NCBI GenBank assembly: GCA_024704765.1
Contig: JAKMXF010000343.1
Location: forward strand, 911,095 to 975,094
Origin: Oopsacas minuta
Taxonomy: Eukaryota > Animalia > Porifera
Length of the DNA stretch: 64,000 bases
Direction of reading: 5' to 3'
Within the stretch, counting starts at the first letter, position 1, and the number at the start of each line of letters is the position of its first letter. The notes below the pieces were generated by a model, which made no database searches, was not told the DNA's origin, and was given only the letters and a program-made list of their open reading frames with translations. Below, one piece after another: positions 49,140 through 61,639 of this stretch. Made by a program: the position numbers and the translations under genes.

Positions 49140-50170
49140 TACTAATTAAACTTCTACATAAAATGTCCGAAATACTCCCCCTCTACATCTATGCATATGT
49201 ATAGCCTTTCAACCCATTTCGAAAATATTTTTAATACTCGTCTCTGTCCGCTGAATTGAGCTAGTGGTAAATCCCGTTATTAACTCTTGCCGGGTATGAA
49301 ATAACCATCCTCCGAGATGTTTTTCAGTTCAGGGAATAGCCAGAAATCACAAGGTGATAGATCTGGGGAATACGGTGGATATTCATCGTTTCAAACCCGA
49401 TATCTTCAATGAGTAACCTAAATAATTTGAAACATGAGGCCTGGGATTATCATGGGAAGTTTGATTCCTCGAGTGCCTGTACACGGACGTCGTGTTTTAT
49501 AGACTCTCGAGTTCTCTTAGGAATTCATCTGCGTAAAATTCTCAATTTAATCGTTCTCCTATAGGCAAAGGTATTTGAGCCACTGGCCCATACGCGTCAA
49601 AAAATATGCTGCAGAGAACCCTATCGTCTCGGAACTCGGGAGGTGCCTTCCCGGGGGATAAGAACCTTTGGGAGCCCAATTTACTTTGTTACTTACGCAG
49701 ATGTTCTGAAAATATAATCCAAGTTTCGTCACCAGTAACGATTTCATATAATCTGCAAGAATTAAATCTCTATATTCTTCAAGCAATTTTTGCGCATGAA
49801 ACCCTCTTCTCCTTTTGCCTTTTTGTGAGAATTTTTCGCATCCATCGCCCTGAAATCTTTCGATATTCGAGATAATCATATATAATTGTTTGAACACTTC
49901 CCAATGAGATGTCCAGATTAGGGCAATCTCGTCAACGCTCAAATGGGAGTCAATATCCAATACTTCCGATACAACTATAGAATTGCACCCCTCGAACTTT
50001 TCATCCGAAATGTAAAACGCACTTATCCTAGCCTGATCGTACTCGCTGAATGATGAAGATTCTACTTTAGAACGTCCAAATTGGTGCACAATTGAAAAGG
50101 TTAGAGCTAAATTACACTACTAAGCCAAAGTCTATGGGCGAAATTGTATTAGTCACCAAATCAATTTATA
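49140..50170 (-). mobile_element. Decayed mariner
   Basis: YEIVTGDETWII and PPYSPDLSPCDFWLFPELK motifs; ORF 49559-50089. Confidence 0.85.
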
Positions 50171-50570
50171 CTGATTCTAGTTACTATCTATAGCCATAGC
50201 AATGTGCCTACTAACATCATTGCATAGTGACTTACATTATTGAGAATCCTGAACAGGAATGCAAACTACAAAATACCAAGTAATCATAATTATTACCCCT
50301 GCTTCAGAACAATGCTGTCAATTTCTAAACGTAAGAGTGCAAAATGAAGCTGACTAGTTCATGATTAGCATTGTTATTCTAATAACTACGTTATATAATG
50401 TTGTTTGCAACACTGCAACAACTTGCAGCCTGTTAAGAGGCCTATGAGAGGGTGGGGCAGTCGGGGTCAAATTCGACAGGTGACACTATGTTCGTACATT
50501 GTGAGAATGTAGTTATCACAATGTTGTGTTAGAAATAAAGCATTTGCTCGTATAATTATGGTGAGAGCAT
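49972..50570. repeat. 599-bp segment duplicated in inverted orientation at 54338-54469 plus 60326-60792; contains the empty Ginger target GGCC (50439-50442)
   Basis: Reverse-complement comparison by eye; one mismatch noticed (TTGCACC vs TTCCACC). The lengths add up (132+467=599). Confidence 0.95.
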
Positions 50571-53564: not shown

Positions 53565-54650
53565 TCTAGAAGTTGTACAAATATTGTTTTTGTGATAATT
53601 ATCACAACAAAGCAAGAAGGGAAAAGTATTTCGATATTGTTGAGGAGATTAGTCGAGGAATCAGAACGCTATTACTTCAGTGCAATACAAAATATGCGCC
53701 ATTCCAAACTTCCGTAATTAATTCAAGCTGAACGGACCTGTTTCTATTTACCATTGTCTGAACATTCATAGATTTTGCTAATCCAAAAAAGGATATTAAA
53801 TTAAATGCCTTCTCAACCCCTAAGTTTCAAAGATTTCTAATTTAAAGGTTGGTGTCAAATCATTTAAAGCATTGGATGAGAGTCACAATATAAATTTCTT
53901 AATACATATAGATTCCAAAGTGACCTCAAAATAAGATGAAAATTAAAAGCCATGTACGTTCGTTTGCTCGCTTTCTATAACAGATCAATTCTATATTTAT
54001 TTGAATAGTATATTTGGTCAGCTATTATCAATACTATACATAATTATTAAAGTTATGCAGTGATAATTTAATTGAAAGTGATAGCTATTAGAGATACGTC
54101 TAATAAATAACATAAAAACACAAGAGACAAATACAATATCTCTCTCACATACTAGTTAACTGTTCCGTTTTTGGCCGAGGTGCCGATTTTTCGGACATAT
54201 GTTGGGAGTTATGTCCCGCCAAGACGTCCCAAAGGGAGAATTGTCCCGCTTTTCAGTGCATAGGACTAATATTAATATGTTATGTTCCGCTAAAATACTA
54301 CTTATTTCCCGTTGTTTTCTTGCAGAAGTTAACATGTATGCTCTCACCATAATTATACGAGCAAATGCTTTATTTCTAACACAACATTGTGATAACTACA
54401 TTCTCACAATGTACGAACATAGTGTCACCTGTCGAATTTGACCCCGACTGCCCCACCCTCTCATAGGCCTGTTGCGTAGGATTTTGACCCGCAAGTAGCA
54501 ATTGCAAATCAAGTAATATCAACATTTCATCCCTAGTCACATAGTATTCGTATTTATACATGTGTGACTTCCAGAATGCACACACTAACATTTTACTTTA
54601 TTTCTAGTTTTCAACTTCAACACTTATATTTACTTTTGACATTTTTCATT

Positions 54651-57600
54651 ATGGATGCGACAGAGTATGAAGCAATACGTGGATACCTCCAGACGAATAT
54701 TATCCCACCAGAAATCAAGAGTGATCGCTACAGAAAGAAGAATTTTGTCAGAAAGTGCAAGGGGATTTACTTTCAAGAGAATAAGCTAATGAAGGTATAT
54801 TCTTCAATGATATTTTTGATTTATACTTATTTCCGGGACATAATTAGAAATCTTGAGGCAACTACATATCTGCGAGGAGGCAGATATGTAGTTGCCTCAT
54901 TAAATTTGCGTACCATAGGGAGATGAGAAGGGTGAAAACGCTAGGGGGACTCCTCTGCCCCTCAATGCTACCTACAACCTCTGAGTTTAACTAAAATAAT
55001 TTCTTGTAGATTTTCAGAAAGAAAAATGGCTGTGTGAAATATTTGGAGATTCCACTAGTCTCAGAAATTGACAACATTATCGGATTCTATCACAATGTCA
55101 CTCATCCTGGAATCAATACTACCATTGATGGAATCCGAAATAAATATGATTGGAATGGCATATACAATGATGTTGGATCCTATGTGAGTTACTAAATTAC
55201 GTATTTCTTTCATACATGATTTTCCAAGAAAATGTGGCTGAGAACACAGACTTACCAACCCTCCAGGGATACCTGGATTACAAATTTTGAAAATCCAGGG
55301 AAATTTGCAAAAGGGGTTGTTAAGTCTGAGAACAGCATGTATTTTATAGTTTGAGGTTATTCACCTTGTAATTATTCTACTGTATACAGCTTTATTTGTG
55401 CTATTGTAAAATTAATATTGTGCGATCTGATGATATTTAGTATACCGGTATACAATTTTATCATATGGAAATCTATTTGTGCGGTACAACCAACCAACCA
55501 TGTATCTAACAACTAATGACCCTTGCGGTAGTTAGTAATTGGGATAGGTAGTGGGAGTATTTCACATAAACATATTTGCCAACCTGAGTGAAGAAAAAGC
55601 GGGACGGAATGCTAATTTAGCGGGACATCTGGAACGTAGCAAATTACATTAGACTGGACTACAAACTGACAATTAAATCATTTCCCGTTCTAGATCCGAA
55701 CTTGCCATGACTGTCAAACCTCTGCTGCTCTACCTCCTCAGCCACAACCAGAGCTTCAACCTATTCCTCCTCCTGAAGAACCATGGTGTCATTGTGGAAT
55801 TGATCTCATATGCAATATGTCTCGCACTGTACTTGGATTTCAGCACATTCTTGTCATCGTGTGCTACCTGAGTAAATTTGTAATTGCCCGACCACTCAAG
55901 ACTAAAACTTCTAAAGAAATATTGGATTGTTTACAGGAAATTTATCTCTCGTTCGGTGTACCTAACATCCTCCAACATGATCAGGGAACAGAATTCTCAA
56001 GCAAGGTAACTCATATTTTTACATACTCGAGATTAGTAATTGTAAATACACCAAGTAAATTATTCCCGATACACAATACAACCTACTATATTGGATATAC
56101 GTACGTAACATGTTGCATTGTCAATTGTCAGCGCATTGCTTCAATATATACCCTGGTAGGAAATTGTGCGTCCTGATGGCTATATTTAAGAAACCGTGTG
56201 GAAAATTGGATTTTAATTTATGTTGAATACTAATAAATAAGAATTTACGAATTGATGCAACTACCTTCGGATGGAAAATTTACCTTATTAATCGTTATAT
56301 CTTTCTAACTATTGCTGTACAAGACTAAATACATGCGCGTAGTAGATTATTATCGTTCTCTTATTTACTTTCAAGATAGGAATTTCAAGAATTTCACAAG
56401 AAGATAAATGTCAACACCAGAAGAACCACAGCATACCACCCACAAAGTAATGGACTTGTTGAGTCACACAACAAAATATTGAAAACGTGAGTATTGATGC
56501 TAATCATAAATATATATCTATTCAAAGCCTTACATATGTTTAATACACGTCGTTTATAATTAGATAGCTTTGAATTAATTTAACACTTTTACAAATAGAA
56601 AAATCAACAAGATGCAATCTGATGGGGACACTGAATGGACAGAGAAAGTACAGACAGCAGTACTAGCAGCAAATACTCAAACCAAAATCTCTACAAGCTA
56701 CACACCCTTTTATCTCATGTTTTTGGAGAGACTTTGATTCATCTAACCTTCTCAATCTTATCACTTCTCCAACTAACCCCGGATTACTAACCGAAGCTGA
56801 TATCTCAGAAGCAGAAGTATCAGAAGATGAGAATATTCAAATGGATGCAAACGAACCACGCCCATTTGACTTTCCTATAATTGATAACGAATGGATAGAA
56901 AATCTTTCTTCCACACGTAAAGCTGACAGAATGAATGCTATTGAAAACATCAAGGCAGGTCAGAAAGTTCAAAAGAAAACATATGACAGCAAAGTTAAAC
57001 ACAACAGGTAAGAAATAACGAAACACATTCTTGTGTGATGTAACATGTTGGAATTTCATGCATCATCTCTTACTAAAATTAAATTAAATTCACTGACTGT
57101 TGTATAATCCGATAAATATGAAATAGTCTTGAATCGGAACTAATTTATTGTTTCCTCAATTATATGAATTCTTAAATTCCAAAACACTTACTTTTAGTTA
57201 TATAATTAGCATCATTACAAACTGTACGTAATTGGCACATTATTTTCTTTGTATAATCATTGTGTAAACTTTAGATCAGAATTTGTGGAAGGAGATGAGG
57301 TACTTGTACATAATATAAAGAAAGCCAAGCGACTCCCAGGAACAAAAGATGCAAAGAAATATTTGGGACCATATACGATAGAGGAAGTTAAACCAAGCCA
57401 CCTAGTTGCTCGCAAAGACCCAGATAGCAAAACAACAAAATTACCTATCCATCTATCAAGAAAATATCATTCTCGCATGAACGAAAAACGGCAGGTTCGA
57501 ACGAAGACAGGCAAATCAAAGAAGCCCAAAAGATCTTGCAAATTCACTTCTAGCGGTAAATATATTAGCGAGACAATATTGTACTGAACTATAACTAATT

Positions 57601-58961
57601 GACTCACCCCATGATTAAGTACATATAAACTAGTTGTGTTTTGTATTGATTCGATTAATACGTAATAGCAATCCTACATTTCACATATTTATTTGTATTT
57701 AGATTCTTTGGATGATACATTGAACCTGGATACCATGGAAGAAACATTTGAAACACCGCAACAACACTCAATCTATGAGAATATCGATTCTGAGCTACTT
57801 CAATTGAAACCTCGAATACTATCAGCTCTTGTCAATAACACATACTTAACCCAACTACATAAGAAACTCGCTACAAAAGCTGCATCTCTAACTTCATTGA
57901 ATTTACTATATTCTTACCATCCACCCAACGAACTAAATTTTGAGATTAAGGAGAAACTTGCTGTATCAGCCGGTAATTGGTACGCAGAATATCGTTCCTC
58001 CTATCCTACTGAAATACCTGAAGAGACACGAAGAGATCTTGACTATCCAATTGCTGTTCTATTACCAGTAATAATTGAGTTAATATTCCCAACTGAGCAA
58101 GTTCATGAGATCATTGAAATACCAGAACAATCTATACAAAATGCATCAGATCTTATCCCATATCCTAAATGGGGAGGAGAGTATAACAACATCGTGCAAT
58201 CTAACACCTGTTCTATCGACAATATATTGGCTATTCTTAGTTCGAATAAAGCAACCATCATAGACTCACTGAAGTTAATCGGAAGTACACACATTGAAGC
58301 TAAATTCCACTACATATTCCAATTGGCTGCTAATTGTGAATTTGAGAAACTTCGAGAATATGTTGCTACTAAAATTGGGCTTGAAGTTATTTATGATTCC
58401 TCAGGATTGATACGGTCTTATGATTTCTTTGGATCAGAGGGTAACATCATCAAATATTTACGAACAGAAGATTTGTGTAACGACAAATATTTCGCTATCT
58501 TCCAATGCCACCAATGCACCAATATCTTTGAGACACAATCCATGATTAGTAATATAGGAGGCGTTATTACAAACCTGGAATCATCTGTTAATCGAAGTCT
58601 CGTTCCTATTAAATGCAAGTCTTGTGGATCAACTACTGTTGTCTTAGAGAGGATATCTGGTCAATTCAAGTCAATACCTGTCATGCTAACAATTGAAATC
58701 GGACATCTACCCGAATTGCCAGACATTTTTGTAAGTGATACTGACAGACACTTTACCATCAGTCACAACCAACGGACACTTCACTACCAACTTGCTGGCT
58801 TTAGCATATTGAGCAATAGACACTTCTATTCAATCCTTTACCAAAACGGGCAATTCTATAAATATGACGGAATGAGAGAACCAATTATCCAACTTTGGGA
58901 CTGTGACACTTTCATCGGATCACTCAATACTGTATTCTACCTCTTGTACTCTTCTGACTAA
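54651..58961 (+). CDS. 7-exon Ginger integrase-protease fusion gene, 894 aa after removing one extra T
   Basis: Exons 54651-54794, 55010-55183, 55694-56005, 56380-56486, 56599-57007, 57275-57555, 57703-58961; all introns GT-AG with matching phases (0,0,0,2,2,1). YPYY-like N-terminus, H2C2 finger (YHNVTHPG..CHDC), GIDL / HDQG / GLVE with DD35E spacing, and a GPY motif. Single +1 in the T-run at 56720-56724. Confidence 0.88.
58164..58961 (+). other. USP/peptidase C19-like papain-fold domain at the transposase C-terminus
   Basis: SNTCSIDNILAIL (Cys 58209), CHQC (58506) and CKSC (58614) zinc ribbon, IPVMLTIEI, YQLAGF...NRHFYSIL (His 58821), QFYKYDG (Asp 58866), LNTVFY. Same order as the USP boxes. 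Confidence 0.7.
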
Positions 58962-60137
58962 TTCTTAGCGATTCACGACTCTTTTCCATCATTCGAAAGC
59001 GCTCAAAGGCAAGGTACATCGAACCTTGTGGGGACCTCTGCCCGAGGTTATTCAGGCAACACAATCCCTATCATGGTGAGCCCAGATAATGGAAACGCGA
59101 CCTGCAACAGCACATCCCCAGTGGCGAATATCATCACTCTACCATCTAAGTATATTGCGAGAAAGGCAGCGCAACTGACGAGTCTACGCCGAGACGAAAT
59201 ACAGCATGGAATCAGATACAAGCGAGTTTCTTATCTATTTTTTATTTTTTAATGTCTCCTTGTCTATGGCCGTTCGGGGTTCGTTAGCTCCTCGTGTGTC
59301 TGTTAAATTACGATTTATTGTACGTATTCGTTTATGTTGCAGCTTAGAGTCAAATTTGGTGTGATCGCAATCACATTAAACTCGCTCCAACACTGCACAC
59401 ATAAACAAGGTGAGGTTAACGTTAAACGTTTAGCGTTAGGGGGTGGCTGTAAGGGGAAGGAGGAGGCCACCGCAGCTGACTTGTTTTGTTATAGAAATCT
59501 AGTGTTTTCCAGGAGTATGCAGCGTGCCAGAGGCTCGCAGTTTTCACCTCAACTCTATATGTGTATCAGCATTATACCAAGACTCCCTTAACAAATGCAT
59601 AGTCTACGCTTGTCCACTAGATGAACATATTTCAGTGGTTATTCCTTAAAGCTTGTCAGGAAGTATAGAAAAATGGGCAAAGATGAAATCGCCTACAATT
59701 CGTACTTAAGATATTCCGAATATTCATTATCATGCTAATGCTTGTAATATTTTTGTTATTTGATAGAATATATTGCAATATATAGATTGACATGTTAAAT
59801 TATATTATTTATTATGAGTTATTAAATACAATTATCAAATACCTACCACCTTCTGTACAAGTAATATTATTATAAAATATTTATATACACCTGTCTATAT
59901 TTGGCATTTTGGATAATTATACATATTGTAAATTTGTTATATGTAGTGGGAACATAGTTTACATGTTATCAAACAAATTCACTACTTTCTAGAATCCAAC
60001 TCTAAATTGACTTGTTTATTCAGTTATGTATACGTATGGCAAGTCTAAAGTTGAATTACATTATGTACATTTAGTGATAATTACGTAATGAAAGTGTATG
60101 GAAATCGAAAAAGTCAAATGACAGAGAAGTAAGATTA

Positions 60138-60321
60138 CTTTAGGGTCAAAATCATACGACAATAATACATTATATGCGGGTCAAAATCCTACGGCTGTAA
60201 TTAGTGTAATACATTTTGATGCGGGTCAAAATCCTACGCATTTATTACATCGTAGGATTTTGACCCGCACCATGGATATGCTATTTGGATTTTGTATTGC
60301 GGGTCAAAATCCTACGCAACA
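60138..60321. repeat. Ginger right-end subterminal repeats (GGGTCAAAATC(C/A)TACG, 5 copies, one inverted)
   Basis: Copies at ~60142, 60177, 60222, inverted at 60251-60269, and terminal at 60299-60321. Confidence 0.9.
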
Positions 60322-61639
60322 GGCCTCTTAACAGGCTGCAAGTTGTTGCAGTGTTGCAAACAACATTATATAACGTAGTTATTAGAATAACAATGCTAAT
60401 CATGAACTAGTCAGCTTCATTTTGCACTCTTACGTTTAGAAATTGACAGCATTGTTCTGAAGCAGGGGTAATAATTATGATTACTTGGTATTTTGTAGTT
60501 TGCATTCCTGTTCAGGATTCTCAATAATGTAAGTCACTATGCAATGATGTTAGTAGGCACATTGCTATGGCTATAGATAGTAACTAGAATCAGTATAAAT
60601 TGATTTGGTGACTAATACAATTTCGCCCATAGACTTTGGCTTAGTAGTGTAATTTAGCTCTAACCTTTTCAATTGTGCACCAATTTGGACGTTCTAAAGT
60701 AGAATCTTCATCATTCAGCGAGTACGATCAGGCTAGGATAAGTGCGTTTTACATTTCGGATGAAAAGTTCGAGGGGTGGAATTCTATAGTTGCACCAAAA
60801 CATTGCCGATATATCCAATTCTACTACAGATCAAAATCTAAAACTTTATTCCGCATGTTGGCCCCCATTCTATAGGTTGTACAACTTTCGCAAACAGTCC
60901 TCCCAGCTTCGATGGTATTGTTTCAATTCATTTTGCTAATCCGAAAGTATTACTTTGCAAAATACACATCCAGGAAATTGTTAAATGTACAACTTCAATC
61001 CAGTTTCAACAAATAAATACGTACGTATGATAATGTGAATTTTCAAAGATATCCCAGGCTTCTTGCGACCACCTTTCCTAGCCAGAATGTTAGACCACGA
61101 GTTCCTGTTTTTCCGGTCCATCCAAAATGAAGCGCGGTCGAGCTAATCTAATCAGTCTTGATTCATAAAGCTAGGGCGCTCCAGGTACCGCACCTTTAAT
61201 TTGCTGGCATTCACCGGCAAGCAAGGTAATCTGTAGTAAAGTATATTTTTATATGACTGTTCTTTTTACTATTCGAAGGAAATTTCACAATTGGGTATTA
61301 CAAAAGGGTAAATCAGGCAAAAAGGGTTAAGCCTCACTACTGTATAGGTAATAATCAAAATCTCTAACCTTATACATTCTTTACTTAATAATTTCTAAGC
61401 ACAGTTGAAACAAGTTTATCTGCGCCGACTAATCCTATGACATAGTATAATTGCTCAGCTCTAAAATGGTTGACTTAGTATATACTGTATTCATGTTTTC
61501 GCCCTCCAGTTCAAATCTTAAGAGATCAAGAAATTAAATTTGGAATATACACTCATAATGACATCTAGTTGTACACCTGATATTCGAAAATTTTCTAATG
61601 TGCATATTTTCACACCTTTTGATACCTCTGGATTTAGGG

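What the first reader, a model, noticed from the sequence alone, without database searches (positions are those of the whole stretch)
54470..60321. Ginger transposon whose integrase is fused to a USP-like (ubiquitin-specific protease fold) domain with an intact catalytic triad
Seen: a complete element (25-bp TIRs, GGCC TSD) whose seven GT-AG exons splice in phase into an H2C2-DD35E-GPY integrase plus a 420-aa final exon. That exon carries NTC (Cys box), two CxxC pairs, P.ML.I, Y.L...HF (His box) and YD..VFY in USP order. Established: Ginger1 transposases are described with C-terminal OTU, Ulp1 or PHD add-ons; I do not recall a USP/C19-type protease among them. Inference: this may be an undescribed Ginger lineage that deubiquitinates its own transpososome or target chromatin, or self-processes the polyprotein. 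The stop-free final exon suggests selection on the domain.
Basis: partly seen in the sequence, partly recalled or inferred. Interest (0 to 1): 0.9.

Follow-up and report, generated by a model that had tools for sequence, protein, structure and literature searches.

The report
Ginger transposon carrying USP-like protease
A cut-and-paste "Ginger" transposon in a glass-sponge genome encodes a retrovirus-like integrase joined to a very diverged ubiquitin-specific-protease-like domain, an add-on I could not find described for this transposon group, although this particular copy has a broken reading frame.

Summary
The element is real. [quoted passage not shown] An uninterrupted copy of the target site lies 4 kb away, 100% identical over 432 bp. 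It has seven GT-AG exons; an RNA-like public run shows joints for introns 2, 4 and 6 (exon 6-7) and loose ends for intron 1.

One claim fails: the exons do not read through. The CDS is 2686 nt, with a frameshift in exon 5 (stop at 56735). Two other copies in the same genome (probably Oopsacas minuta) are broken elsewhere.

The integrase has H2C2, DD35E and GPY. The last 270 residues fold with high confidence (pLDDT 88). The matches listed are USPs, USPL1 and the PAN2 pseudo-hydrolase (VIA-align Z 13-15.5). No Pfam or PDB sequence search finds the domain. Cys170, His374, Asp389 and a four-Cys zinc ribbon are conserved across lineages only 25-60% identical. dN/dS between lineages is 0.15-0.28.

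So this is a Ginger1-type element with a USP-like module where OTU or Ulp1 is known. Activity and substrate are untested.

Nearest structures are human C14orf28 and the Drosophila NOF protein C-terminus.

Side find: a strongly conserved 3' non-coding block ends in a candidate type III hammerhead ribozyme.

The scan had already noted the empty site (s1-218344).

The parts
54466..54469 (.). Left copy of the 4-bp target-site duplication GGCC
   Evidence: Sequence. The empty site with a single GGCC lies at 50139-50570, 100% identical over 432 bp.
54470..54494 (+). 5' terminal inverted repeat, 25 bp, starting TGTTG (the TGTNR pattern)
   Evidence: perfect match to the 3' TIR; 0 expected by chance.
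54651..54794 (+). Exon 1: start codon and a segment fitting the Y/F-P-Y/F-Y/F ('YPYY') pattern upstream of the zinc finger
   Evidence: Loose ends in run X3 join 54794 to the start of exon 2.
55010..55183 (+). Exon 2: first half of the H2C2 zinc finger (HNVTH at 55091-55105)
   Evidence: Pfam Integrase_H2C2, E 3.2e-6.
55694..56005 (+). Exon 3: CHDC of the zinc finger (55703-55714), first catalytic Asp (GIDLI, 55796-55810), second Asp (HDQGTEF, 55976-55996)
   Evidence: Pfam rve, E 1.8e-6. GT..AG joint 55183/55694 in X3. Coordinates.
56380..56486 (+). Exon 4: catalytic Glu (LVESHN, 56455-56472), 35 residues after the second Asp
   Evidence: Pfam rve_3; joint 56486/56599 in X3.
56599..57007 (+). 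Exon 5: end of the integrase core and an acidic linker; holds the frameshift
56720..56737 (+). Frame break of this copy: a T run followed by an in-frame stop at 56735-56737
   Evidence: CDS is 2686 nt, mod 3 = 1. P0004 reads through. L005 and L006 have one base fewer here. Most contigs of four runs differ from the window here.
57275..57555 (+). Exon 6: GPY motif (LGPYT, 57363-57377) and a basic cluster KSKKPKRS (57513-57536), a likely nuclear localisation signal
   Evidence: The NLS reading is inference.
57703..58961 (+). Exon 7 (419 codons plus stop): helical region followed by the USP-like domain
   Evidence: Open frame. Exon 6-7 joint 57555/57703 in X3. The same junction is in annotated proteins P0004, P0012 and P0025.
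57759..58085 (+). Five-helix region (residues 20-128 of exon 7); function unknown
   Evidence: AF2 model. dN/dS 0.18-0.28 between lineages. No lead from the protein atlas.
58149..58958 (+). USP-fold domain (residues 150-419). Candidate triad: Cys170 (58209-58211), His374 (58821-58823), Asp389 (58866-58868). Zinc-ribbon Cys at 58506, 58515, 58614 and 58623.
   Evidence: Model pLDDT 88.2. Foldseek listed hits are USP-fold proteins, probability 1.0. VIA-align Z 13-15.5 over ~235 residues. Column conservation. Coordinates.
58979..59206 (+). Non-coding block just 3' of the stop; far more conserved between lineages than the coding sequence
   Evidence: About 86% identical by BLAST with gaps counted; I estimate ~93-95% over aligned bases from the alignment. 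Exon 7 is ~74% identical. The indels of 5 and 14 nt are not multiples of 3.
59147..59205 (+). Candidate type III hammerhead ribozyme: helix III 59150-53/59199-202, cleavage-site A 59154, helix I 59155-59/59170-74, CUGACGA 59175-81, helix II 59182-85/59192-95, GAAA 59196-99
   Evidence: Rfam RF00008 at 19 bits, below the gathering score of 48.5, E 0.37. 96.9% of cells paired against 17-60% when slid; one compensatory AU->GC. The same architecture occurs in 46 metagenome sequences.
59410..59494 (+). 85-nt GT..AG intron in the 3' untranslated region
   Evidence: Joint in run X3; borders read.
60140..60269 (.). Four subterminal copies of the TIR core (18-mers at 60140-57, 60175-92 and 60220-37 on the minus strand; 60252-69 on the plus strand); likely transposase-binding sites
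   Evidence: 6 matches against 0.03 expected. The same motif is repeated in L003, L005, L006 and L007 and is similar in L001.
60297..60321 (-). 3' terminal inverted repeat
60322..60325 (.). Right copy of the GGCC target-site duplication
50139..50570 (-). Uninterrupted ('empty') copy of the insertion site, in an inverted duplication of the flanks
   Evidence: 100% identity over 432 bp, spanning the junction with one GGCC.

Best explanation
This is a copy of a Ginger1-type cut-and-paste DNA transposon of a hexactinellid sponge, probably Oopsacas minuta. Its single seven-exon gene encodes a Gypsy-like integrase (H2C2 finger, DD35E core, GPY motif, basic nuclear signal). The integrase is joined through an acidic linker to a helical region and a highly diverged USP-fold cysteine-isopeptidase domain.

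Shown here: the element's ends and 4-bp GGCC duplication, the exon structure, splicing of the family's transcripts including the integrase-to-USP exon junction, the USP fold, and conservation of Cys/His/Asp and the zinc ribbon under purifying selection across lineages.

Inferred: the integrase binds the TIR and the repeated subterminal 18-mers, excises the element and inserts it at GC-rich tetramers. The USP-like domain is an active isopeptidase that plays the role OTU or Ulp1 domains are thought to play in other Ginger1 elements. That role would be removing ubiquitin or a ubiquitin-like modifier (SUMO is a serious candidate) from the transposase itself or from chromatin or repair proteins at the transposition site.

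This copy is recently inserted but not coding-competent as assembled, because of a frameshift in exon 5.
For: - Ends and TSD. A second full copy (L005) also has GGCC.
- Exons and frames.
- Spliced joints in the RNA-like run X3, including 57555/57703. The same junctions are in annotated O. minuta proteins.
- Integrase domains.
- Fold: AF2 pLDDT 88.2, pTM 0.70. Foldseek finds 343 PDB matches at E<=0.001; the 50 listed are USPs, USPL1 and the PAN2 pseudo-hydrolase. VIA-align Z is 13-15.5 over residues 148-417. AFDB, the ESM Atlas structures and the atlas sequence features all point to USP/UCH.
- Secondary-structure context fits a papain-like site: Cys170 at the start of helix 170-181, His374 at the start of strand 374-381, Asp389 just after strand 384-388.
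- Conservation: C170 39/40, H374 21/21, D389 18/20 plus one Asn; four zinc Cys 88-100% in alignment A3, 86-95% in A4.
- dN/dS of the USP part between lineages is 0.15-0.28.
- The same integrase-then-USP-like order occurs in three diverged lineages (L003/L007, L004, L001).
- Precedent: Ginger1 elements with OTU or Ulp1, and a C19 domain fused to another transposase (PMC2836005).
Against: - No enzymatic evidence exists.
- No Pfam or PDB sequence hit above threshold. The best are Peptidase_C98 at E 0.0024 and UCH at E 0.042, each in a single family member.
- The Asn five residues before the catalytic Cys in canonical USPs (my recollection) is not conserved in the alignment.
- All three O. minuta copies examined are broken, so current activity of the family is unproven.
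- In L001 the integrase and the USP-like part lie in different, overlapping frames, so fusion there is inferred rather than seen.
- Run X3 is only inferred to be RNA, from its exon/intron depth and its joints.
Confidence: 0.78

Rival explanations
1. The USP-like domain is a catalytically dead or non-hydrolytic ubiquitin/Ubl-binding module, as in the PAN2 pseudo-hydrolase. It would tether the transposase to modified chromatin or to a host partner rather than cleaving anything.
For: - PAN2 pseudo-hydrolase structures are among the fold matches.
- The sequence is too diverged for any Pfam model.
- The canonical Asn before the Cys box is not conserved.
Against: Cys170, His374 and Asp389 are almost invariant across lineages 25-60% identical, and substitutions occur mostly in evidently decayed copies. 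To my recollection, pseudo-enzymes usually lose these residues.
Confidence: 0.12
2. The domain is a cis-acting processing protease that cuts the polyprotein, separating the integrase from the C-terminal part. This was proposed for OTU-bearing MULE transposases.
For: PMC1702500 suggests polyprotein processing for OTU fusions.
Against: USP-fold enzymes cleave after the C-terminal Gly-Gly of ubiquitin-like proteins (established knowledge). The linker (end of exon 6 to residue ~20 of exon 7) has no Gly-Gly or ubiquitin-like segment. The only GG pairs lie inside the USP-like domain itself.
Confidence: 0.05
3. Integrase and USP-like protein are made as two separate products, by alternative splicing, internal initiation or two ORFs, and are not a fusion.
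For: In family L001 the two parts lie in different frames that overlap by ~78 nt. Prokaryote-style gene calls list them as separate ORFs.
Against: The exon 6-7 GT..AG joint is seen in an RNA-like contig and is in phase. O. minuta annotations join the two exons. Exon 7 of family A has no conserved start codon at its 5' end. The L001 overlap of two open frames is what a single indel in one continuous ORF would leave.
Confidence: 0.05

Closest known systems
Ginger1 DNA transposons (Bao, Kapitonov & Jurka 2010, PMC2836005): Hydra, Aplysia, Branchiostoma, aphid
   Same: Cut-and-paste element with TIRs and TGTNR termini. It makes a 4-bp GC-rich TSD. A single intron-bearing gene encodes a Gypsy-like integrase with H2C2, DDE and GPY/F. 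A papain-superfamily isopeptidase domain sits at the C-terminus.
   Different: The C-terminal domain is USP-fold, not OTU or Ulp1(+PHD). The TSD is GGCC (GCGC/GCAC in L003), not CCGG/CCGT. The TIR is 25 bp, against the 40-270 bp described. The host is a sponge. The protein is ~895 aa, against 500-800 described.
Ubiquitin-specific proteases (MEROPS C19, Pfam UCH PF00443) and USPL1 (C98, SUMO isopeptidase)
   Same: The fold matches (Z 13-15.5 over ~235 residues). The motif order is Cys box NTC, four-Cys zinc ribbon in the 'fingers', His box, then Asp about 15 residues later.
   Different: No significant sequence match to any Pfam model or PDB chain. The loop before the Cys box is longer. The canonical Asn before the Cys is not conserved. 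The domain is attached to a transposase.
Human C14orf28 / DRIP1 (Q4W4Y0), classed as a papain-like deubiquitinase-type domain in PMC10318531
   Same: It is the best structural neighbour in Swiss-Prot AFDB (E 7e-12, TM by hit 0.57, 17% identity) and in the ESM Atlas (TM 0.63, 257 residues aligned). Both scores are better than for canonical USPs.
   Different: It is a stand-alone 310-aa vertebrate host gene with no transposase part.
Drosophila NOF-FB transposable element 120.7-kDa protein (P16320), and AFDB clusters named SWIM-type, GCM-domain or DNA-helicase proteins
   Same: A USP-like domain lies at the C-terminal end of proteins that look like transposon proteins (P16320 residues 782-1056, E 1.3e-8).
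   Different: They belong to other transposon superfamilies, judged by protein name only. The similarity is structural only and was not examined further here.
Trichomonas vaginalis XP_001314237.1: transposase_11 + Peptidase C19 (cited in PMC2836005)
   Same: A C19-type ubiquitin hydrolase domain joined to a DDE transposase.
   Different: The transposase is IS5-like, the host is a protist, and the C19 domain is recognisable by sequence.
Type III hammerhead ribozymes (Rfam RF00008)
   Same: The candidate at 59147-59205 has the CUGANGA and GAAA cores, three helices with helix III open, and an A at the cleavage site.
   Different: It scores 19 bits against a gathering score of 48.5. It lies in the 3' UTR of a DNA-transposon gene. 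Animal hammerheads in the papers found are mostly type I in retrozymes or Penelope-like elements.

Membership tests
Ginger1 DNA transposons | Cut-and-paste element bounded by terminal inverted repeats, without LTRs or reverse transcriptase | tested here: met
   Perfect 25-bp TIRs. Pfam finds only integrase domains, no RT or RNase H. The precise empty site is present.
Ginger1 DNA transposons | Termini follow TGTNR | tested here: met
   TGTTG at both ends.
Ginger1 DNA transposons | 4-bp GC-rich target-site duplication (CCGG or CCGT/ACGG in Hydra) | tested here: inconclusive
   The TSD is 4 bp and GC-only, but it is GGCC here and in L005, with GCGC/GCAC in L003. The length and GC-richness are met; the published tetramer is not.
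Ginger1 DNA transposons | Integrase-like transposase with H2C2 zinc finger and DDE core | tested here: met
   Pfam Integrase_H2C2, rve and rve_3. D, D and E with 35-residue spacing were read from the sequence.
Ginger1 DNA transposons | GPY/F motif (present in Ginger1, absent in Ginger2) | tested here: met
   LGPYT at 57363-57377. WIGPYP occurs in the L001 family.
Ginger1 DNA transposons | YPYY motif (Y/F-P-Y/F-Y/F, ~40 aa upstream of the zinc finger) | tested here: inconclusive
   Exon 1 has Y, PP, F and YF in that order and spacing. It was not aligned to reference Ginger1 sequences, because none was available to the tools.
Ginger1 DNA transposons | TIRs of about 40-270 bp | tested here: not met
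   The TIR is 25 bp, with extra subterminal copies of its core. The related L001 family has ~190-bp imperfect TIRs. This is a descriptive range rather than a defining feature.
Ginger1 DNA transposons | C-terminal OTU or Ulp1 (plus or minus PHD) domain | tested here: not met
   The C-terminal domain is USP-fold. A different O. minuta integrase, P0172 (47% identical), lacks it and has a weak OTU hit.
Ginger1 DNA transposons | Integrase groups with Ginger1 rather than Gypsy or Ginger2 in a phylogeny | not tested
   No reference Ginger1 or Ginger2 sequences were obtainable. The nearest hits outside the family, few of them named, carry RT and RNase H domains, i.e. are Gypsy-type polyproteins, at ~30% identity.
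USP / peptidase C19 (UCH, PF00443) | USP fold (thumb-palm-fingers) | tested here: met
   Foldseek probability 1.0 to 343 PDB matches at E<=0.001; the 50 listed are USP-fold proteins. Z 13-15.5.
USP / peptidase C19 (UCH, PF00443) | Significant match to the family's sequence profile | tested here: not met
   No Pfam hit for the window protein. The best in any relative is UCH at E 0.042 and C98 at E 0.0024, both under the cut-offs. PDB profile searches found nothing.
USP / peptidase C19 (UCH, PF00443) | Catalytic Cys, His and Asp/Asn in Cys-box and His-box positions | tested here: met
   The motif order and secondary-structure context fit, and the residues are conserved. Three-dimensional clustering was not measured.
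USP / peptidase C19 (UCH, PF00443) | Isopeptidase activity on ubiquitin or a ubiquitin-like protein | not testable with these tools
   Needs biochemistry.
Hammerhead ribozyme type III (RF00008) | Conserved cores CUGANGA and GAAA, helices I-III, NUH cleavage site | tested here: met
   Sequence at 59147-59205. The same layout occurs in 46 metagenome sequences.
Hammerhead ribozyme type III (RF00008) | Reaches Rfam's gathering score | tested here: not met
   19 bits against 48.5.
Hammerhead ribozyme type III (RF00008) | Self-cleavage | not testable with these tools
   Needs in-vitro transcription or mapping of RNA ends.

The most novel reading that the evidence does not exclude
The sponge domain belongs to a transposon-borne lineage of USP-like isopeptidases, distinct from cellular USPs. 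This lineage has been attached repeatedly to unrelated transposases: Ginger integrase here, the Drosophila NOF protein, and SWIM/GCM-type MULE-like and helicase proteins in AFDB. It is the source of the vertebrate gene C14orf28/DRIP1, which would then be a domesticated transposon domain. In addition, the Ginger family here processes its own mRNA 3' end with a hammerhead ribozyme.
Probability: 0.25. Interest if true: 0.8.

Novelty: new variant of a known kind. Interest (0 to 1): 0.6.

Why it matters
Ginger1 transposases were already known to carry OTU or Ulp1 isopeptidase domains. That led to the unproven idea that ubiquitin or SUMO removal is part of transposition. A third, unrelated isopeptidase fold (USP) in the same position, under purifying selection, is independent evidence that the activity itself is what these elements need.

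The domain family is invisible to Pfam, so such add-ons are probably under-counted in transposon annotation. Its closest structural neighbours are the human orphan protein C14orf28/DRIP1 and the C-terminus of the Drosophila NOF protein. This gives a testable lead on where an uncharacterised human gene came from.

The candidate hammerhead ribozyme sits in a 3' block conserved more strongly than the coding sequence. If it cleaves, it would be an unusual way for a DNA transposon to shape its own transcript.

Tried and rejected
- Single-sequence AF2 gave an unusable model (pLDDT 34). The model used came from a 64-sequence alignment.
- Sequence searches of the domain against Pfam and PDB gave only weak zinc-ribbon or chance hits (single sequence and two profiles).
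- The helical region (residues 18-135) gave no lead in the protein atlas.
- I looked for the USP-like domain in the related O. minuta integrase P0172. It is absent (hhalign probability 0.4%).
- I looked for further copies of the domain elsewhere in the window, in six frames with an HMM. There are none.
- tRNA and Rfam searches of the conserved 3' block found only the sub-threshold hammerhead.
- Thermodynamic folding of the block is not better than shuffles (z 0.34). RNAalifold found no covariation outside the hammerhead.
- The block is not found in the L001 or L004 lineages, nor next to the metagenome hammerheads.
- The upstream ORFs in L002, L003, L004 and L007 gave no Pfam hit.
- Rejected: an LTR-retrotransposon fragment (TIRs, empty site, no RT).
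- Rejected: a host gene interrupted by a transposon (the domain lies inside the TIRs in every copy and lineage).
- The organisms behind the ENA assemblies were not identified.

Full report
**1. The element and its ends**

Window 54470-60321 is bounded by perfect 25-bp inverted repeats that start TGTTG. No match is expected by chance. Both ends are flanked by GGCC. Because GGCC is a palindrome, the repeat finder reports 30-nt arms.

I settled the boundary with an empty-site test. A model made of 300 bp of left flank ending in one GGCC, joined to 300 bp of right flank, matches window 50570-50139 on the minus strand. The match is 100% identical over 432 bp and runs across the junction. So an uninterrupted copy of the target lies in an inverted duplication 4 kb upstream. 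This agrees with earlier scan note s1-218344. It fixes the ends, shows a 4-bp GGCC duplication, and argues for a recent insertion.

A second full-length copy in the same genome (L005) also has GGCC on both sides. A 5'-truncated copy (L006) has GGTC at its 3' end. A related element from another assembly (L003) has GCGC/GCAC.

Four more copies of the 18-nt TIR core lie in the last 180 bp: 6 matches in all against 0.03 expected. The same motif is repeated in all related elements. In L003 it has expanded into a long 35-bp tandem array. These repeats are plausibly transposase-binding sites, but that is inference.

**2. The gene**

Seven exons with GT-AG borders give a Gypsy-like integrase followed by a 419-codon last exon.

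- Pfam finds Integrase_H2C2 in exon 2, rve in exon 3 and rve_3 in exon 4.
- HNVTH...CHDC, the two Asp, and the Glu 35 residues after the second Asp can be read directly. So can LGPYT (the GPY motif) and a basic KSKKPKRS cluster.
The CDS is 2686 nt, frame 0 ends at a stop at 56735-56737 in exon 5, and the remainder is in the +1 frame.
- The annotated paralogue P0004 (O. minuta LOD99_1838) reads straight through this point.
- L005 and L006 have one base fewer in the T run. Most contigs of four public runs differ from the window there.

Whether the window's version is a real lesion or a homopolymer error cannot be decided, because contigs drop rare variants.

**3. Transcription and splicing**

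Four public runs of one sample hold the family. Three have flat depth. The fourth (X3) has 10-50 times less depth over introns 2, 3 and 5 than over the exons.

X3 carries GT..AG joints exactly at 55183/55694, 56486/56599 and 57555/57703. Loose ends join 54794 to the first bases of exon 2.

X3 also covers about 800 nt after the stop codon and shows an 85-nt intron at 59410-59494. These contigs come from the whole family, not necessarily from this copy. That X3 is RNA is my inference from this pattern.

**4. The genome and the copies**

The closest proteins (82-98% identical) are hypothetical proteins of Oopsacas minuta. Paralogous loci come from assembly GCA_024704765.1.

- L005 is 96.6% identical over the whole element. 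L006 is 96.3% identical from intron 3 onward.
- Exons and introns have diverged about equally, at ~1-4%.
- Window versus L005 gives dN/dS 0.41 for exon 7 and 0.38 for the integrase exons.
- L005 has a nonsense codon at window-equivalent 58455, which explains why P0004 is truncated. L006 has several stops and indels.

So each of the three copies is broken in a different place. The open last exon here reflects youth, not selection on this copy.

**5. The last exon**

Neither Pfam nor PDB sequence searches recognise it. A full HMMER scan of 1.84 billion representatives found 187 relatives. Nearly all are fragments of decayed copies.

Word-indexed searches found named relatives only in O. minuta. 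The rest come from unnamed ENA assemblies. One more distant relative, P0161 from the representative search, lies on a Logan contig.

With a 64-sequence alignment AlphaFold2 gives pLDDT 88.2 and pTM 0.70:

- a five-helix region at residues 20-128;
- a disordered stretch at 133-149;
- an alpha/beta domain at 150-419.

Fold searches on this model:

- Foldseek against the PDB returns 343 matches at E<=0.001. The 50 listed are USP1, USP12/46, USP35, USP18, USP30, USPL1, Ubp8, USP7 and similar, plus PAN2.
- VIA-align gives Z 13-15.5 over ~235 residues spanning 148-417.
- The protein-atlas feature search, run on the sequence before the model existed, also pointed to UCH/USP clusters.

Structural context and conservation:

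- Cys170 (in NTC) opens helix 170-181. His374 opens strand 374-381. Asp389 follows strand 384-388. This is the papain-like arrangement.
- The His-Asp spacing of 15 is close to that of USPs. That comparison is from my own recollection.
- Across relatives only 25-60% identical: Cys170 is kept in 39/40, His374 in 21/21 of the full-length set, and Asp389 in 18/20 plus one Asn. The four zinc-ribbon Cys are kept in 88-100%.
- Sub-threshold Pfam hits in two relatives are to Peptidase_C98 (E 0.0024) and UCH (E 0.042). Both are collinear with the C-terminal half of those profiles.

**6. Is the architecture conserved and selected?**

The order integrase-then-USP-like domain is found in three further settings:

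- L003 and L007, from other assemblies. All integrase exons are 63-85% identical and the USP part ~60%.
- L004, with a partial integrase and a USP part 36% identical.
- L001, a second O. minuta family with ~190-bp imperfect TIRs. It has an intronless 459-aa integrase ORF and a USP-like frame that is open from 7833. The two overlap by ~78 nt in different frames, as one indel in a continuous ORF would produce.

Between lineages the USP part has dN/dS 0.15 (L003-L007, dS 0.58) to 0.21-0.28 (window versus L003/L007). The helical part has 0.18-0.28. The domain has therefore been kept by selection during the family's history, about as strongly as expected for a working transposase part.

**7. What it is**

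The element has TIRs, TGTNR ends, a 4-bp GC-only TSD, H2C2 + DDE + GPY, and a pattern consistent with YPYY. It has no reverse transcriptase. This puts it with Ginger1 rather than Ginger2, which lacks GPY/F and YPYY and targets AT-rich sites (PMC2836005).

It differs from the published description in four ways:

- the TSD tetramer (GGCC, not CCGG/CCGT);
- the TIR length (25 bp, not 40-270 bp);
- the host phylum;
- the C-terminal domain.

Another O. minuta integrase, P0172, is 47% identical. It lacks the USP-like domain and has a weak OTU hit. This hints that related integrases in one genome carry different isopeptidase modules.

I found no paper describing a USP-type domain in Ginger. Bao et al. 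mention only a C19 domain fused to an IS5-like transposase in Trichomonas. Repbase and Dfam were not searchable.

**8. How it probably works**

The inference rests on the parallel with OTU- and Ulp1-bearing Ginger1, MULE and Helitron proteins.

- The integrase does the cutting and joining.
- The USP-like domain would remove ubiquitin or a ubiquitin-like modifier from the transposase, or from chromatin or repair proteins at the site.
- SUMO is a serious candidate. Ulp1 domains fill the same position elsewhere, and USPL1 is among the best matches with the highest identity, 16%.
- Self-processing is unlikely, because the linker has no Gly-Gly site.
- A non-catalytic binding role cannot be excluded, but it fits poorly with the conserved triad.

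**9. Neighbours of the fold**

The best matches are not cellular USPs.

- In Swiss-Prot AFDB the best are human and mouse C14orf28/DRIP1 (E 7e-12 and 1.4e-11), then residues 782-1056 of the Drosophila NOF-FB 120.7-kDa protein (E 1.3e-8).
- The ESM Atlas structure search also ranks the C14orf28 cluster first.
- AFDB fold clusters at the top include long proteins with the domain at or near the C-terminal end. They are named SWIM-type, GCM-domain and ATP-dependent DNA helicase, names typical of MULE and Helitron proteins.
- C14orf28 was recently classed as a papain-like deubiquitinase-type protein, with no mention of transposons (PMC10318531).

This is a lead, not a result.

**10. Side observation inside the element**

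Directly after the stop codon lies a ~230-nt block, 58979-59206.

- Conservation: I estimate ~93-95% identity over aligned bases between the window and L003/L007, or ~86% by BLAST with gaps counted. The adjoining exon is ~74% identical.
- The indels there are not multiples of three.
- Its 3' end fits a type III hammerhead ribozyme with all core nucleotides invariant.
- There is one compensatory AU-to-GC change in helix III, and 96.9% of cells are paired against 17-60% in slid controls.
- Rfam scores it only 19 bits, against a gathering score of 48.5.
- A metagenome scan with the core plus helix II returned 46 sequences with exactly this layout and unrelated helices.

I estimate about 70% that it is a genuine hammerhead. 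Cleavage would fall ~193 nt after the stop codon. What the upstream 170 nt do is unexplained. Parts of the block are also repeated elsewhere in the genome, judging by high depth and loose ends.

**Verdict**

The USP-fold reading is well supported. Function is inferred. This is a new variant of a known kind.

Noticed in passing
window 58979-59206 (+): A non-coding block directly after the transposase stop codon is much more conserved than the coding exon. By my estimate from the alignment it is ~93-95% identical over aligned bases between the window and elements of another genome (L003, L007), against ~74% for the exon. BLAST with gaps counted gives ~86%. Its upstream 170 nt show no fold signal, no Rfam hit and no tRNA. 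Parts of the block have the highest depth in one run, and loose ends at 58992 and 59128 suggest it is also repeated elsewhere in the genome.
   Followed up: partly
window 59147-59205 (+): Candidate type III hammerhead ribozyme in the 3' UTR. The CUGACGA and GAAA cores are present and three helices form. There is one compensatory change in helix III. The Rfam score is below threshold (19 bits). The same architecture occurs in 46 metagenome sequences.
   Followed up: partly
window 50139-50570 (-) versus 54338-54469 + 60322-60625: An inverted duplication of the insertion site carries the uninterrupted target with one GGCC. It is 100% identical over 432 bp, so the insertion is younger than the duplication and very recent. 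The earlier scan note s1-218344 reported the same thing.
   Followed up: yes
model of window 58149-58958; Swiss-Prot Q4W4Y0 and P16320: The nearest structural neighbours are human C14orf28/DRIP1 and the C-terminus of the Drosophila NOF-FB transposon protein, ahead of cellular USPs. AFDB clusters named SWIM-type, GCM-domain and DNA-helicase proteins also carry such a domain at or near the C-terminal end. This may be a transposon-borne USP-like lineage, and C14orf28 may be a domesticated member.
   Followed up: partly
P0172 (O. minuta LOD99_3154): A second Ginger-like integrase in the same genome is 47% identical. It lacks the USP-like domain and has a weak OTU hit (E 0.074, residues 604-642). 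Related integrases may carry different isopeptidase modules.
   Followed up: partly
L001 6203-9646 (GCA_024704765.1 JAKMXF010000299.1): A compact, intronless second family has ~190-bp imperfect TIRs and a TIR motif similar to the window's. The integrase and USP-like frames overlap by ~78 nt in different frames. The flanking tetramers (GCGT / GCCG) do not match.
   Followed up: partly
L003 10258-11185: In a related element of another assembly the subterminal TIR-core motif has expanded into about 25 tandem 35-bp repeats.
   Followed up: no
window 55182/59654, 57863/59378 and 59489/60094 (joints): Contigs in DNA-like runs skip large internal parts of the element. These are probably internally deleted, non-autonomous derivatives of the family.
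   Followed up: no
window 59410-59494: An 85-nt GT..AG intron lies in the 3' untranslated region. It is seen as a joint in the RNA-like run.
   Followed up: no
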